Shown here one piece after another: positions 24,839 through 28,354 of a stretch of 64,000 nucleotides of DNA. The position numbers and the translations under genes were made by a program. A model generated the notes under the pieces. That model made no database searches. It was not told the DNA's origin and saw only the letters and a list, made by a program, of their open reading frames with translations. This stretch comes from Botryllus schlosseri (lineage: Eukaryota): positions 15,376,001 through 15,440,000 of the forward strand of contig CM119371.1 of the NCBI GenBank assembly GCA_051294905.1. The letters run 5' to 3'. The first letter of the stretch is position 1; each line of letters starts with the position of its first letter.

Positions 24839-25406
24839 TCATTTATTTCGAAAAAAGAGCATATCAATGATATCGTTGAACGTTATTGCGTCGATTCGCG
24901 TGCTGAAATCCTCCGGATCGGTTGATGTTTCGAGGTAATCCGCTTTGATGCCATCCGACGCTGCGATCCGAGTTCTTGCGTTCGATCTGACCGTTTTGTT
25001 TGATGTAGCGATCACTGGCTTGTAGTATAAACGATACGAGTGGAAGGTCGGGATTAGGAACAACTACGCTGGGCGAATAGATGACGAATTCGTCAGCCGA
25101 ATTCAGAGGTTGATAATGCTCGATCCCGTCGCGAGTATACGTAACGACCAAACCTCCTTCATGCTTCAGAGTGGCTCGATATTTCTGAATGATCCCGCTT
25201 GTGGCATGTACAAAGAGTTGATCCGAGGTCAATTCTGCTCCATTCGAAGCTTCGATACGTAATTTTGTGATGTCATTAAAAAGATACAAGTCTTTTCTAT
25301 AGGGCCCCTGGGCCAGAATAGTATCTCCACGGATTGCTAGACTCATTCTTTGAAAAGAAATATCAAACATAAGTACAACAGTCATCACGCAATTCCACCT
25401 CGCCAT
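24839..25406 (-). pseudogene. Unknown accessory ORF A, possibly secreted, probably one frameshift
   Basis: Hydrophobic N-terminus MARWNCVMTVVLMFDISF. Comparison with the paralogue at 26441-27000 shows third-position changes in the frame ending EDFSTRIDAITFNDIIDMLFFRNK (ORF 24839-25063), so that frame is the likely true C-terminus. Confidence 0.5.
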
Positions 25407-25944
25407 CAAATTTAGTCGAGCCTCTTCTTATATTAGGTGTCGCATAACAGACATTACGAATATATTGCAACCCCTTCCGCTTGATGAGAAAAGGACACGC
25501 AGGATAAAACTTTGCATGCTCGAGCCAGGGATCATCGCACGGCAACCAATTTTGAAACAACCCTCCGCATGAGAAACACTTTAAATGATCCTTATAGCCC
25601 AAATAGAACAATCCGCAGTCTGCGAGCTCTGTTCCGGAGGTATTGATATTATCCGGCCACCGCATGAATGTGCTTAGTCTACGAGCATAGCGTGTCATGT
25701 TATAGAAAACGGGATCATTCAATGGGGAAACAGTTACATCTCTATGCTTCGCATAGCATTCATAAATCTTTTCCCCTCTGTTATTTATCATAGCTTGGTA
25801 CTGTTCAATGGGACCCATCCGAGTTTCATCTTCGCCTATTCCTATGCTACTTGTGTTACCGATGCAAGCGCAGTTGAATGTAGCGTAATTTGTAGGGTCC
25901 ACACTACGCTTAGGTAGCGAATCGCTTTGATCAATGTTCGACAT
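25363..25944 (-). CDS. Inhibitor of apoptosis (IAP), single BIR domain, no RING, 193 aa, intronless
   Basis: RLSTFMRWP..LADCGLFYLGYKDHLKCFSCGGLFQNWLPCDDPWLEHAKFYPACPFL is a complete BIR signature with Zn ligands C-X2-C-X16-H-X6-C. The GGL..W...DDPW.EH groove is of type II (IBM-binding) BIRs. Confidence 0.93.
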   Translation of the reverse strand: MSNIDQSDSLPKRSVDPTNYATFNCACIGNTSSIGIGEDETRMGPIEQYQAMINNRGEKIYECYAKHRDVTVSPLNDPVFYNMTRYARRLSTFMRWPDNINTSGTELADCGLFYLGYKDHLKCFSCGGLFQNWLPCDDPWLEHAKFYPACPFLIKRKGLQYIRNVCYATPNIRRGSTKFDGEVELRDDCCTYV

Positions 25945-26440
25945 TGCTATCCGAATTGATATACTCTCATGATCAGTATGCTTTATACCGATATTGAGCT
26001 ATGCACCGTTGAAATATGTGCTTGGTACCGATCGAATGATAGGCCCCCTAGGTCGTATCACGGAAAATTAGAACGTCGACTGCTCACAGAAAAAAGCCAC
26101 GTAGCTCATATCCGTTCCTGGTACGTGTTATCAATAATTAGAATGTTAGTAAGAATGCCACGAGTACAATCACGCGGTGATGATTAATACCTAAAAAATG
26201 ACATCTTGACTCATGCATTTATTTTAAAAAATTAAACTATAGTGTATCGGAACTTAGTTTTACTTTACTGAGATTAGTTTTACTTTTCAACTAACTTGTC
26301 TGTCGATACATTCATTTAATTACGATCCCGAGAAGTCGGATCGATTCCCATAATATAACGATTCAGTGCCGACCTTATGTCTTATACTTCAGCTGACACT
26401 TACTCAGTCTCATTGAAATAGCATTGTATAGTGTACGAGC

Positions 26441-27000
26441 TCATTTATTTCGAAAAAGAGCATAATATATCAATGATATCATTGTGCGTCATTGCATCGA
26501 TTCACTTGCTGAAATCCTCCAGATTGATGTTTCGATGTCGCTTCACGAGTTCCATTCTTGTATCCATATATATCAACAAGCAGCTATGCAAATCCACAGC
26601 TTAGATAACTAGGACTCTTGTATGTCATTAACATTATAGACAGCCATTCGACGATATTCAACTGGCATTGATGCTTTCGATACAGCGCAGTATGTATAAC
26701 GTTACGCTGATCAATTCAATTTCAACAATGGGACCCGCGCACAATTATATGGTCGGATTTTCGTTGAATATTGACGACACCCACAAATCGAAAGATCTCT
26801 TTTTCCTGCACATCTATGATGCAATTATCCTTCCAATGACTACGAATAACTTGAGATTCCGCAGGATTAATATCCGAATCAAATAATACGAGCGTATCTT
26901 TTCCAGCTTTCAAAACTTGCACTGACGCGTTCGGTCTATGTCGCAACACTACAATATGTGGCCATACAAAACGATGTATAGTTATTTTTTGTAGTACCAT
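26441..27000 (-). pseudogene. Unknown accessory ORF B, decayed paralogue of ORF A
   Basis: 26395-26540 is clearly homologous to 24790-24940 (EDFSK*IDAMTHNDIIDI vs EDFSTRIDAITFNDIIDM). Weaker N-terminal similarity (LKAGKDTLVLFDS vs LAQGPYRKDLYLFND). Contains stops and frameshifts. Confidence 0.45.
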
Positions 27001-27517
27001 CCCTACGACTTATTTCAGATCGCAGTTTACTGAGTAGAGCTTAATACTAATACCTGCATAATTTTTGCATGTCTAGAATAAGGGTAATTAAATCGATAGT
27101 AAAACGCCAGCGGCGACTAATAACGTTATAATGTAAGCTGCGACGGTGCTACTATAATGTTAGGAGCTATTAAAGCCGAATACGCTGAAGTATAGCATAG
27201 ATTTTGCATATAAAATGTATACACAAATTTCCTGTTAAGGGTAGGCTCTGCGAAGCTGCTTATGCCTCGATGATCATAGTACTTATGAGCTATTGGATAG
27301 CGCATATACAATGTATCATATAGAACTTCGTCACTTTCGGATAGTACATATACCCCTGGGATAGAACTTAGACGCTATAAAGATCGATGTTCGCCTACGA
27401 ATTCTCGCTTTACTCATGTCGTAGGCTCGATAAATTGTAAGTTGCGGCGAGCAACTCATTTTTAAAGTCCCTAAGACGCTATTGAAATGAACTCTGACTC
27501 GCTATTATCCTCAAACC

Positions 27518-28354
27518 ATGGAATTATCACGAGTATCACCTTCGCTCACTGAAGAAAAGGATGAAATTACATCCGGAGCATATTCCTTGGCGAGGAATTA
27601 CATCATGTACGAACTCGACGGCTCATGCGTTAAGGCAAATACGAAAGCAGAGAGAACCTTACGGCGAGTTGGGGATGAAATGTTTGAGCGACACCGAACT
27701 ATCGTAAACGCGCTCTCCAAACGTCTTCGCTACTGTGATGTAGAAGTCGATGAAAAATATGAAGAATATTCACCCGACGAGCGAATGTTCCTGATGATAG
27801 CTGATGGAATTTTCAAAGATACCCAAGAAAATTGGGGTAGGATTGTCTCTCTTTTTGTGGTCGCTAGCATTCTTGCTCGGAATAAGGAGGATGAACATCG
27901 CGGTGATCATATAGAAGGTATCATACAGACAGTTGGGAGTTACATTGGTAGTAGAAGACGAAAGTGGATAGCGCAAAACGGAGGATGGGTAAGCGATTTT
28001 ACAAGCCTTACTAAGGATTTAGGAATTATTATCTATAGCTCGAGGTACTACGATCCCCAGAACCCTTATCATCCCTCGAACCTTAGATTCCACCTTATAA
28101 TTTTGTTCTCAACTTTTCCCACAAAGCACTGTAATTTACTTTCCAAGCGCAGCGAACTTCGAATTACCTAACAAGTAGGCTACGCTAACTTTCTGTAAGA
28201 TTTGGAAGGCTAACATTTTTTATTATTGTTTCAGGACAGTTTTGTAGGATATTTCGATAACACAACATTCGGTAGCAATAAAGTTTGGAAGAGCCTCATG
28301 TTTGTTGGAATTGGACTGACGTCTATTGCAATGGCATTAACACGACAGCGATAA
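27518..28354 (+). CDS. Bcl-2 family protein (anti-apoptotic type, Mcl-1/Bcl-2-like), spliced, 196 aa
   Basis: join(27518..27988,28235..28354). BH4-like LARNYIMYEL, BH3 LRRVGDEMF, BH1 IFKDTQENWGRIVSLF, BH2 WIAQNGGW|DSFVGYF. Donor GTAAGC at 27989, branch CTAAC at ~28210, polypyrimidine tract and CAG at 28232-28234. Exon 2 gives the TM tail VWKSLMFVGIGLTSIAMALTRQR. Confidence 0.93.

What the first reader, a model, noticed from the sequence alone, without database searches (positions are those of the whole stretch)
25363..28354. Dual anti-apoptosis cassette (IAP + Bcl-2) carried inside a Polinton-type virus
Seen: within the TIRs, immediately upstream of the ATPase, lie an intact BIR protein and an intact BH1-4 + TM Bcl-2 protein, divergently transcribed. 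Established: Bcl-2 proteins block Bax/Bak mitochondrial permeabilisation and type II BIRs bind caspases/IAP antagonists. Large DNA viruses use such genes (adenovirus E1B-19K, herpes/pox vBcl-2, baculovirus IAP). Inference: a ~15-kb integrating virus blocking the intrinsic death pathway at two levels implies a real infectious or reactivation cycle opposed by host apoptosis, and a route for moving apoptosis regulators around the germline. I could not check whether this pairing is already reported for Polintons/adintoviruses.
Basis: partly seen in the sequence, partly recalled or inferred. Interest (0 to 1): 0.9.

Follow-up and report, generated by a model that had tools for sequence, protein, structure and literature searches.

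The report
Defective Polinton carrying IAP and Bcl-2
A 14.7-kb virus-like transposon (Polinton/Maverick) in an animal genome has lost its DNA polymerase gene and carries in that place two intact, apparently host-derived cell-death blockers, a BIR/IAP protein and a Bcl-2 protein; both kinds of gene are already reported from related adintoviruses, so this is a good example but not a new kind of thing.

Summary
Window 24348-39020 is a Polinton/Maverick copy with terminal inverted repeats and a 6-bp target-site duplication (CGTATC). Inside it lie an open 193-aa single-BIR gene (25363-25944, minus strand; Pfam BIR 1.5e-18) and a two-exon, 196-aa Bcl-2 gene (27518-27988 and 28235-28354; Pfam Bcl-2 1.2e-20). 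The Bcl-2 intron sits exactly where a cellular Styela clava Bcl-2-like gene has one. The AlphaFold model (pLDDT 90) best matches pro-survival NRZ and Mcl-1.

- **The copy is defective.** Relatives carry a protein-primed PolB directly upstream of the ATPase; this copy keeps only its last ~76 codons, abutting the Bcl-2 stop. Integrase and the capsid-like gene are also broken.
- **The junction is real.** The same Bcl-2/PolB-remnant/ATPase junction occurs in an independent metagenome contig at 96.7% identity.
- **The genes were under constraint.** BIR and Bcl-2 show purifying selection between copies (dN/dS 0.14 and 0.23-0.40).
- **The cassette is lineage-specific.** None of 83 more distant family loci carries BIR or Bcl-2.
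- **The gene types are not new.** Bcl2 and IAP homologues in adintoviruses were reported in 2021 (PMC8502044).

Verdict: a new member of a known kind, of moderate interest.

The parts
24342..24347 (.). Left target-site duplication CGTATC
   Evidence: Read. The same hexamer lies at 39021-39026.
24348..24607 (+). Left terminal inverted repeat, with 42-bp internal sub-repeats
24864..25409 (-). ORF181, an accessory ORF of unknown function. The probable ATG is at 25346, 20 nt after the BIR stop. An AATAAA follows its stop.
   Evidence: It is open and 96% identical in sister contig L001. There is no Pfam hit. The AlphaFold single-sequence model is uninformative, with pLDDT 35.
25363..25944 (-). BIR-only IAP gene (193 aa; BIR domain at residues ~87-156; no RING)
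   Evidence: Pfam BIR 1.5e-18. PDB matches: cIAP1/XIAP BIR3 chimera 6e-26, XIAP BIR3 ~5e-22, ML-IAP ~1e-21; type I BIR1 domains are weaker, 7e-14 to 6e-08. dN/dS against L001 is 0.14, p=6e-6.
26463..27026 (-). ORF-X: an accessory ORF or remnant (92-aa open part). Its 3' end, including AATAAA, repeats that of ORF181.
   Evidence: It is 80% nt and 69% aa identical in L003, which carries a second copy on the other side of its Bcl-2.
27518..27988 (+). Bcl-2 gene exon 1 (157 codons: alpha-1 helix, BH3, BH1, and BH2 up to GGW)
   Evidence: Pfam Bcl-2 1.2e-20. PDB Bcl2L10/NRZ 2e-10 and Mcl-1 4e-10. AlphaFold pLDDT 90. Foldseek NRZ:Bad complex TM 0.79/0.84.
27989..28234 (+). Bcl-2 intron (GT...AG, phase 0, after the W of GGW)
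   Evidence: The same position is used in the Styela clava cellular gene and in L004. The intron is retained in L003, L089 and L088.
28235..28354 (+). Bcl-2 gene exon 2 (39 codons plus stop; end of BH2 and the C-terminal tail anchor)
   Evidence: It is 97% aa identical in L088.
28344..28565 (+). Remnant of protein-primed PolB: the last ~76 codons only, not open. The rest of the ~1150-1300-codon gene is absent.
   Evidence: tblastn with the L005 PolB aligns residues 1225-1300 at 54% identity, with 3 stops in the aligned frame. Homology to L007, L006 and L005 starts here.
28572..29189 (+). A32/FtsK-type packaging ATPase, open
   Evidence: Pfam Pox_A32 8.3e-09. 32 homologues were found. dN/dS against L088 is 0.25, p=0.013.
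29225..29964 (+). Two small ORFs (99 and 112 aa) in the positions of L005 genes g115 and g161
29961..30943 (+). rve-type integrase, broken: at least one frameshift and one in-frame stop
   Evidence: Pfam rve 1.5e-13. Against the 331-aa L005 integrase (rve plus chromodomain) the match uses two frames and contains one stop.
31204..32636 (+). Two tandem paralogous ORFs (237 and 240 aa), open. They are candidate minor capsid proteins by position only.
   Evidence: Homologues are present in 26-27 family loci. There is no Pfam hit.
32614..32985 (+). 123-aa basic ORF, homologue of L005 g126, open
33047..34305 (+). Major-capsid-like gene (relatives ~437 aa), broken: at least one frameshift and one in-frame stop
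   Evidence: Intact in 17 family loci. The family profile has no PDB sequence match, so the capsid role is inferred from position and size.
34308..34763 (+). Adenain-like cysteine protease, open
   Evidence: The family profile A6 matches ASFV S273R protease at 4e-08 and adenain at 0.039.
34779..37412 (.). Tandem repeat zone with ~505-nt units. It includes a partial second copy of the protease 3' part (35960-36325).
38814..39020 (-). Right terminal inverted repeat
39021..39026 (.). Right target-site duplication CGTATC

Best explanation
Window 24348-39020 is an endogenous, defective copy of a Polinton/Maverick, from a family abundant in host-associated and other environmental metagenomes.

In relatives the gene order is PolB, ATPase, two small ORFs, integrase, small ORF, two ~250-aa ORFs, basic ORF, capsid-like gene, protease. 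This copy keeps that order from the ATPase onward. Between the left TIR and a ~76-codon PolB stump it has a 3.7-kb accessory block instead of a polymerase. The block holds ORF181, a BIR-only IAP, ORF-X and a two-exon Bcl-2.

The Bcl-2 was taken from a cellular gene as genomic DNA. It keeps the BH2-splitting intron and is 47-49% identical to a cellular tunicate Bcl-2-like protein, against 21% or less to known viral Bcl-2 proteins.

Inferred mechanism: in the element lineage the two proteins kept the infected cell alive at two steps of the intrinsic death pathway.
- The tail-anchored Bcl-2 would sequester BH3 proteins or Bax/Bak-type effectors at the mitochondrial outer membrane.
- The RING-less BIR would bind IAP antagonists or an initiator caspase through a type II groove.

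Shown: the anatomy, the homologies, the fold, the intron, the shared junction, purifying selection between copies, and the absence of the cassette from the wider family. Inferred: the anti-death activity, the host origin of the BIR, and the timing of the polymerase loss relative to the gain of the cassette. The copy in the window cannot replicate or integrate on its own.
For: - **Element identity.** TIRs and 6-bp TSD. Pfam BIR, Bcl-2, Pox_A32 and rve. Protease profile against S273R and adenain.
- **PolB in relatives.** L005, L006 and L007 have a large ORF ending just before the ATPase. 7 of 12 family versions of this ORF hit Pfam DNA_pol_B_2, best 3.6e-23. 22 of 31 loci with at least 1 kb upstream have it there.
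- **PolB loss here.** The window keeps only residues ~1225-1300.
- **Same junction elsewhere.** L088, from another sample, is colinear with window 28153-29251 at 96.7% identity.
- **Cellular origin of the Bcl-2.** Best named relative is Styela clava bcl-2-like protein 2, lying between XPG and NUDIX genes. Intron position and last-exon length are identical.
- **Pro-survival type.** The fold is closest to pro-survival NRZ, then Mcl-1. Viral Bcl-2 proteins are far weaker.
- **Selection.** BIR has 16.5 synonymous against 9.5 non-synonymous changes, dN/dS 0.14, p=6e-6. Bcl-2 exon 1 gives 0.23-0.40 among three copies. ATPase gives 0.25, p=0.013. Between the window and L001/L088 there are 5 gaps in 567 non-coding nt and none in 1701 coding nt.
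- **Lineage-specific cassette.** 0 of 83 family loci have BIR, Bcl-2, ORF181 or ORF-X, by tblastn and by a Bcl-2 profile with positive controls.
Against: - No functional or expression data exist, so anti-death activity is inferred from homology only.
- BOK, a pro-death member, is rank 4 in the fold search, and Bax is a weaker sequence hit. The pro-survival assignment is probable, not proven.
- Type II status of the BIR rests on the ranking of PDB hits, not on a residue-level test.
- No full-length relative carrying both PolB and the cassette was found. It is therefore open whether the cassette lay upstream of PolB before a deletion, or came in with the event that removed PolB.
- L001 and L088 could be the same locus in other individuals rather than separate insertions.
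- The host species is not identified.
Confidence: 0.7

Rival explanations
1. Helper-dependent lineage. The PolB-less form is not a dead end. It would be a non-autonomous Polinton lineage that traded its polymerase for death-pathway inhibitors and persisted by using the polymerase, integrase and capsid of full-length relatives in the same host.
For: - The junction is shared by two copies that differ by ~8% in the adjoining non-coding stretch.
- Since that split the ATPase and BIR show excess synonymous change and no indels.
- PolB-bearing relatives exist, with ATPase 90% and 66% identical at the protein level. Both lineages come from the same Logan runs, SRR25569780 and SRR25569784. Those runs are not shown to come from the window's host.
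- The broken genes in the window (PolB, integrase, capsid-like) are those a helper could supply. The ATPase, protease and cassette are open.
Against: - Only one full copy was seen.
- L001 and L088 may be the same locus in other individuals.
- The ATPase signal is small: 7 against 7 changes, p=0.013.
- The pattern of broken and open genes rests on a single copy and could be chance.
Confidence: 0.2
2. Host co-option. The element is dead, but the host has recruited its BIR and/or Bcl-2 as extra apoptosis regulators. The purifying selection would then be host-level.
For: Both ORFs are open in an element with three broken core genes. dN/dS is below 1. The Bcl-2 is of a cellular type and has an intron.
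Against: The ATPase, protease and three other element ORFs are equally open, and the ATPase also shows constraint, which a host would not need. One Bcl-2 copy (L003) carries a stop.
Confidence: 0.1
3. This is an autonomous ~15-kb integrating virus, currently capable of infection or reactivation, that blocks apoptosis at two levels.
For: TIRs, TSD, and open ATPase, protease and cassette genes.
Against: There is no polymerase gene. The integrase and the capsid-like gene are each broken at least twice. A 2.6-kb tandem-repeat expansion carries a partial protease duplicate.
Confidence: 0.03
4. Assembly chimera, or a secondary transposon insertion carrying the two genes into a Polinton.
For: More distant family members lack the genes.
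Against: Independent contigs from two other samples reproduce BIR-ORF181 (L001) and Bcl-2 exon 2-PolB remnant-ATPase (L088) colinearly. No TIR, LTR or TSD flanks the block.
Confidence: 0.02

Closest known systems
Adintovirus/Polinton accessory anti-apoptotic genes (Starrett et al. 2021, PMC8502044; Buck et al. 2024 preprint 10.1101/2024.03.25.586562)
   Same: These are Polinton-class elements of animals with PolB, integrase, ATPase, adenain-like protease and capsid genes. [quoted passage not shown]
   Different: - Here both types sit in one element, and the element has lost PolB.
- This Bcl-2 is not specifically related to the one adintovirus Bcl2 in BFVD (Branchiostoma lancelet adintovirus; rank 26, E=0.36, TM 0.45), so the capture was independent.
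- I could not read the paper's supplementary figures, so I cannot say whether a pairing is shown there.
Planarian giant Gypsy-like retroelement Burro (Arkhipova and Yushenova 2019, PMC6431247)
   Same: A mobile element that carries both a BIR and a BCL2-like part.
   Different: Burro is an LTR retrotransposon, and the motifs are domains within a ~4900-aa polyprotein. Here they are separate genes in a DNA element, one of them with an intron.
Cellular pro-survival Bcl-2 proteins NRZ/Bcl2L10, Mcl-1 and A1; Styela clava bcl-2-like protein 2
   Same: BH3, BH1 and BH2, the helical bundle, the tail anchor and the BH2-splitting intron. TM to NRZ is 0.79-0.84, and identity to the Styela protein is 47-49%.
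   Different: The gene lies inside a transposon. It lacks the extra 5' intron and the longer N-terminus of the Styela gene. No BH4 is detected by Pfam.
BIR3 of cIAP1/XIAP and the single BIR of ML-IAP (type II BIRs)
   Same: These are the best single-domain matches, 6e-26 to 1e-21, with the full zinc-ligand set.
   Different: There is no RING, CARD or UBA domain. Instead there is an 80-aa N-terminal part with no recognisable domain. The protein therefore cannot be an E3 ligase and would act by binding only.
Large DNA viruses with a vBcl-2 and/or a vIAP (herpesviruses, poxviruses, iridoviruses, African swine fever virus, baculoviruses)
   Same: The same strategy of carrying captured death-pathway inhibitors. 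Several vBcl-2 proteins are weak structural hits. That African swine fever virus has both gene types is from my own knowledge.
   Different: Those genomes are ten to twenty times larger and mostly do not integrate. Their Bcl-2 proteins are far more diverged from cellular ones (21% identity or less to this protein).
Nematode Mavericks that carry host cargo genes between species (cited in 10.1101/2023.10.06.561300)
   Same: A Polinton/Maverick acting as a vehicle for host genes.
   Different: The cargo there is a protease and kinase genes, not apoptosis regulators.

Membership tests
Polinton/Maverick (Polintoviricetes, adintovirus-like) | Terminal inverted repeats | tested here: met
   137-nt arms at 91% complementarity, with identical 18-nt termini found only at the two ends.
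Polinton/Maverick (Polintoviricetes, adintovirus-like) | 6-bp target-site duplication | tested here: met
   CGTATC on both sides.
Polinton/Maverick (Polintoviricetes, adintovirus-like) | Protein-primed family-B DNA polymerase gene | tested here: not met
   This copy has only a ~76-codon 3' remnant. The gene is present in relatives, where Pfam DNA_pol_B_2 hits 7 of 12, best 3.6e-23. The family passes; this copy is a deletion derivative.
Polinton/Maverick (Polintoviricetes, adintovirus-like) | Retrovirus-like (rve) integrase | tested here: met
   Pfam rve 1.5e-13. The gene is broken by at least one frameshift and one stop.
Polinton/Maverick (Polintoviricetes, adintovirus-like) | A32/FtsK-type packaging ATPase | tested here: met
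   Pfam Pox_A32 8.3e-09, open ORF.
Polinton/Maverick (Polintoviricetes, adintovirus-like) | Adenain/Ulp1-like cysteine protease | tested here: met
   The family profile hits ASFV S273R at 4e-08 and adenain at 0.039. The single sequence gave nothing.
Polinton/Maverick (Polintoviricetes, adintovirus-like) | Double jelly-roll major capsid protein and penton protein | tested here: inconclusive
   A conserved ~437-aa gene and two ~250-aa genes sit in the expected places.
Bcl-2 family, multi-BH pro-survival type | BH1, BH2 and BH3 (Pfam Bcl-2 domain) | tested here: met
   E=1.2e-20 over the full profile, positions 1-100. The NWGR, GGW and LRRVGDE stretches align to Mcl-1.
Bcl-2 family, multi-BH pro-survival type | Helical-bundle Bcl-2 fold | tested here: met
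   pLDDT 90, seven helices in exon 1. TM 0.79/0.84 and rmsd 2.1 to NRZ:Bad BH3.
Bcl-2 family, multi-BH pro-survival type | C-terminal tail anchor | tested here: met
   Exon 2 ends in a ~17-residue hydrophobic stretch, preceded by K and followed by R-Q-R. This is read from the sequence; no predictor was run.
Bcl-2 family, multi-BH pro-survival type | BH4 motif | tested here: inconclusive
   No Pfam BH4 hit at E<=0.01. An alpha-1 helix, residues 10-37, is present in the model.
Bcl-2 family, multi-BH pro-survival type | Conserved intron splitting BH2 after the Trp codon | tested here: met
   The position, the phase and the 39-codon last exon are the same as in the Styela clava gene model.
Bcl-2 family, multi-BH pro-survival type | Inhibits Bax/Bak-type permeabilisation | not testable with these tools
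   Only the ranking of relatives is available: NRZ, Mcl-1 and A1 rank above Bax. BOK is close in fold.
IAP (BIR-containing) proteins, type II BIR | BIR domain with CX2CX16HX6C zinc site | tested here: met
   Pfam BIR 1.5e-18. The ligands are read.
IAP (BIR-containing) proteins, type II BIR | Peptide (IBM) groove of type II BIRs | tested here: inconclusive
   BIR3 and BIR2-type domains score 1e-26 to 1e-18, against 7e-14 to 6e-08 for BIR1 domains. No residue-level test was made.
IAP (BIR-containing) proteins, type II BIR | C-terminal RING E3 ligase domain (present in most anti-apoptotic IAPs) | tested here: not met
   There is no RING or other Pfam domain in the 193-aa protein or in the downstream ORF181.
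IAP (BIR-containing) proteins, type II BIR | Binds caspases or IAP antagonists | not testable with these tools
   No tool here measures binding.

The most novel reading that the evidence does not exclude
A Polinton lineage that has swapped its own polymerase for a block of host-derived death-pathway inhibitors (a BIR-only IAP, an intron-bearing Bcl-2, and two unknown ORFs). It would persist under purifying selection as a helper-dependent, satellite-like element of full-length Polintons in the same animal host, and would multiply apoptosis regulators in the germline as it spreads.
Probability: 0.2. Interest if true: 0.65.

Novelty: new member of a known kind. Interest (0 to 1): 0.45.

Why it matters
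This is a clean, fully bounded example (TIRs and TSD) of a Polinton carrying two intact cell-death inhibitors. One of them is still marked by its cellular intron, so the direction of transfer, from host to element as genomic DNA, can be read directly.

It shows that small integrating DNA elements use the same two-level anti-apoptosis strategy known from large DNA viruses. It also shows that such cargo can be copied around an animal germline: at least three diverged Bcl-2 copies were found.

The polymerase-less architecture, shared by two diverged copies that still show constraint on the ATPase and the BIR, raises a testable possibility. Non-autonomous Polintons may specialise in host manipulation while relying on helpers.

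The matter is of moderate rather than high weight, because Bcl2 and IAP homologues in adintoviruses are already in the literature.

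Tried and rejected
- **Exact look-up of the BIR protein.** Nothing on record.
- **Word-index protein search with Bcl-2 exon 1.** No hit. The full HMMER scan was needed.
- **IMG/VR scans.** No relatives with the ATPase alignment or with the BIR protein.
- **Pfam on capsid-like ORFs, ORF181, the small ORFs and L005 genes.** No hits.
- **PDB sequence searches.** The window protease alone, the L005 PolB alone, the capsid-like profile and the PolB profile gave nothing meaningful.
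- **AlphaFold of ORF181 without an alignment.** pLDDT 35, unusable, so no fold search was made.
- **Bacterial-type promoter and terminator scan.** Promoter-like sites were not enriched (11 found, about 12.5 expected from shuffles). Terminator-like sites were somewhat above the shuffles (8 found, 2.8 expected). The scan is not relevant to a eukaryotic element.
- **tRNA and Rfam scans.** Nothing found.
- **Literature search by sample accession.** Nothing, except that PRJEB22134 is a set of Shandong aquaculture metagenomes.
- **Supplementary figures of PMC8502044.** Not held.
- **Upstream regions of distant family loci.** Only retrotransposon or zinc-finger ORFs.
- **Hypotheses rejected.** Secondary transposon insertion: no borders. 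Assembly artefact: L001 and L088 are colinear with the window. A second copy or host paralogue in the window: none.
- **TIR divergence as an age estimate.** I considered the 9% divergence between the TIRs and rejected it. It would predict far more broken ORFs than are seen, and the TIRs contain shifting 42-bp sub-repeats.

Full report
**1. What is there**

The window holds a 14,673-bp element at 24348-39020. Its two ends carry the same 18-nt terminus, which occurs nowhere else in the window. The inverted arms match at 91% over 137 nt and contain 42-bp sub-repeats. The hexamer CGTATC flanks both ends. A 6-bp duplication and 5'-AG termini are the classical marks of Polinton/Maverick integration; that point is from my own knowledge.

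Pfam finds four domains inside the element:
- a BIR domain (25363-25944, minus strand; 1.5e-18)
- a Bcl-2 domain (27518 onward, plus strand; 1.2e-20)
- an A32-type ATPase (28572-29189; 8.3e-09)
- an rve integrase core (1.5e-13)

A profile of the last ORF and its relatives matches the ASFV S273R protease (4e-08) and adenain (0.039). There are no N stretches in the window.

**2. The two genes of the finding**

*The BIR protein.* It is 193 aa long with one BIR domain, a complete CX2CX16HX6C zinc site and no RING. Its best solved relatives are type II BIRs: BIR3 of cIAP1/XIAP at 6e-26 to 5e-22, and ML-IAP at about 1e-21. BIR1 domains score 7e-14 to 6e-08.

*The Bcl-2 gene.* It has two exons.
- Exon 1 ends on the Trp codon of GGW and is followed by GTAAGC.
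- After a 246-nt intron ending in TTTCAG, exon 2 gives 39 codons that end in a hydrophobic tail anchor flanked by basic residues.
- The annotated cellular gene for Styela clava bcl-2-like protein 2 has its intron at the same codon and in the same phase, and also has a 39-codon last exon. That protein is the best named relative, at 47-49% identity. Its gene lies between an XPG nuclease gene and a NUDIX gene.
- An unnamed 48%-identical gene in a Logan contig (L004) has the same split and no Polinton genes around it.

An AlphaFold model built on 52 homologues has pLDDT 90 and the expected helices. Its best structural match is zebrafish pro-survival NRZ bound to a Bad BH3 peptide (TM 0.79/0.84). 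Mcl-1, BOK, Bcl-xL, Bcl-2 and A1 follow. Viral Bcl-2 proteins match far less well. That includes the one annotated 'Bcl2 [Branchiostoma lancelet adintovirus]', at rank 26.

Pfam reports no BH4. The two genes face away from each other. A third minus-strand ORF or remnant, ORF-X, lies between them, and a fourth, ORF181, follows the BIR stop after 20 nt.

**3. What kind of element, and in what state**

The ATPase has many relatives in metagenome and Logan contigs. An 11.7-kb contig, L005 (ATPase 62% identical), carries an unbroken gene row: a 1300-aa ORF, ATPase, two small ORFs, a 331-aa integrase with rve and chromodomain, a small ORF, two ~250-280-aa ORFs, a basic ORF, a 430-aa ORF and a 150-aa protease. 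The window has the same order from the ATPase on.

The large ORF is a protein-primed PolB.
- 7 of 12 family versions hit Pfam DNA_pol_B_2, best 3.6e-23.
- 22 of 31 family loci with enough upstream sequence have it directly before the ATPase.
- This holds for the closest relatives with that region, L007 (ATPase 90% identical at the protein level) and L006 (66%).

In the window only the last ~76 codons survive, at 28344-28565, and they are not open. This stump begins at the last codons of the Bcl-2.

State of the core genes, by comparison with L005:

| Gene | State in the window |
|---|---|
| PolB | one large deletion; 3 stops in the remnant |
| Integrase | at least one frameshift and one stop |
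| Capsid-like gene | at least one frameshift and one stop |
| ATPase | open |
| Protease | open |
| Two ~240-aa ORFs | open |
| Basic ORF | open |

A 2.6-kb zone of ~505-nt tandem repeats follows the protease and contains a partial second copy of it. The copy is therefore defective and non-autonomous. The capsid role of the 437-aa family is inferred from place and size only.

**4. Sister copies and selection**

Four short contigs from ENA metagenome assemblies are close relatives of the left part.

| Contig | Matches window | Identity | Notes |
|---|---|---|---|
| L001 | BIR with its upstream region and ORF181 | 95.5% nt | both ORFs open |
| L088 | 28153-29251, colinear | 96.7% nt | different study: Shandong aquaculture systems |
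| L003 | Bcl-2 | 82% aa | intron kept; one in-frame stop; ORF-X-type genes on both sides; no ATPase within 1.2 kb |
| L089 | Bcl-2 | 84% aa | intron kept; open |

L088 spans the intron end, Bcl-2 exon 2, the PolB stump and the ATPase. The polymerase-less junction is therefore neither an assembly artefact nor private to this window.

Between copies, dN/dS values are:
- BIR: 0.14 (16.5 synonymous against 9.5 non-synonymous changes, p=6e-6); 0.07 within the BIR domain
- Bcl-2 exon 1: 0.23-0.40
- ATPase: 0.25 (p=0.013)

. The window differs from L001 and L088 by 5 gaps in 567 non-coding nt and by none in 1701 coding nt. If gaps fell evenly, the chance that all five land in the non-coding quarter is about 0.001; that figure is my own arithmetic.

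The genes were thus under constraint while these copies diverged. I cannot tell whether L001 and L088 are separate insertions or the same locus in other individuals.

**5. How widespread is the cassette**

I examined 83 family loci, 400 kb in all, with ATPase 42-90% identical. Many have open PolB, capsid-like and protease genes. None has BIR, Bcl-2, ORF181 or ORF-X. This holds for tblastn and for a Bcl-2 profile that does find the window, L003 and L004. The upstream regions of several loci hold only unrelated ORFs. The cassette is a lineage-specific gain.

No transposon borders surround it. I found no relative that has both PolB and the cassette. It therefore remains open whether the cassette first sat upstream of PolB, where adintovirus accessory genes usually lie (PMC8502044), and PolB was later deleted, or whether one event did both.

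**6. Mechanism (inferred)**

By homology, the tail-anchored Bcl-2 would hold BH3 proteins or Bax/Bak-type effectors at the mitochondrial outer membrane. The RING-less BIR would bind IAP antagonists or an initiator caspase. Together they would block the intrinsic pathway at two steps, during replication of the element lineage.

This matches what is established for cellular NRZ and Mcl-1, for BIR3-type domains, and for viral homologues. It has not been tested here. A pro-death Bcl-2 (BOK-like) is not excluded.

**7. Comparison and novelty**

- Starrett et al. state that adintovirus homologues of Bcl2 and IAP were observed.
- Buck et al. note that most mammal-associated adintoviruses encode anti-apoptotic homologues and/or candidate oncogenes.
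- Planarian Burro retroelements carry both BIR and BCL2-like parts.
- Nematode Mavericks move host cargo.

The finding is therefore a new member of a known kind. Four particulars are new here, as far as the texts I could search and read show:
- both genes in one bounded element
- a Bcl-2 that still carries the cellular intron
- the position of the block in place of PolB
- evidence of constraint in a polymerase-less lineage

The host is unidentified. The best named Bcl-2 relative is from an ascidian, and the only sister-contig sample whose source I could trace comes from a marine aquaculture system. I infer a marine invertebrate host, possibly a tunicate, but this is not shown.

**8. Slip**

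After I wrote from memory, in my private reasoning, a short stretch resembling a human IAP BIR3 sequence. When reading I also used remembered generic polymerase motif patterns as a lead. The PolB call in this report rests.

**9. Verdict**

Novelty: new member of a known kind. Interest: 0.45.

Noticed in passing
window 16970-22585: A second, unrelated element of ~5.6 kb, bounded by long imperfect inverted repeats (arms up to 224 nt, 75-88% complementary). It holds only small ORFs and is probably a decayed DNA transposon.
   Followed up: no
window 34779-37412: About five ~505-nt tandem units at 91-99% identity follow the protease gene. A 94%-identical second copy of the protease 3' two-thirds (35960-36325) is embedded in them.
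   Followed up: partly
window 24798-25944: The BIR stop is followed after 20 nt by the probable ATG of ORF181. Only one AATAAA, after ORF181, serves both. This looks like a bicistronic or operon-like unit, which would be unusual outside hosts that have trans-spliced operons.
   Followed up: partly
window 24798-24936 and 26400-26538: ORF181 and ORF-X share a ~130-nt 3' end at 86-93% identity, covering the last codons, the stop and AATAAA. The rest of their coding sequence is not alike.
   Followed up: partly
L003:1-4016: A diverged Bcl-2 copy (one in-frame stop) lies between two ORF-X-type genes, both on the opposite strand. About 870 nt of unmatched DNA follows the Bcl-2, and no ATPase. This arrangement of the accessory block differs from the one in the window.
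   Followed up: partly
window 5538-7145: BTB, BACK and Kelch domains are found in consecutive plus-strand ORFs, suggesting a KLHL-type host gene or retrogene. Its parts lie in more than one frame.
   Followed up: no
window 24200-24340: Just left of the insertion site there is a stretch resembling a tRNA T-arm (a SINE-like head). ARAGORN finds no tRNA there, and Rfam finds nothing.
   Followed up: partly
family loci L008, L023, L027 and others (alignment A7): Several PolB genes of this Polinton family carry extra domains: Endonuclease VII in 3 of 12 and FYVE/C2H2-type zinc fingers in 4 of 12. The L005/L006 branch is too diverged for Pfam to recognise as PolB at all.
   Followed up: no
window 38638-38833: Two 98-nt direct repeats at 92% identity lie just inside the right TIR. 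The two TIRs differ in their number of sub-repeats.
   Followed up: no
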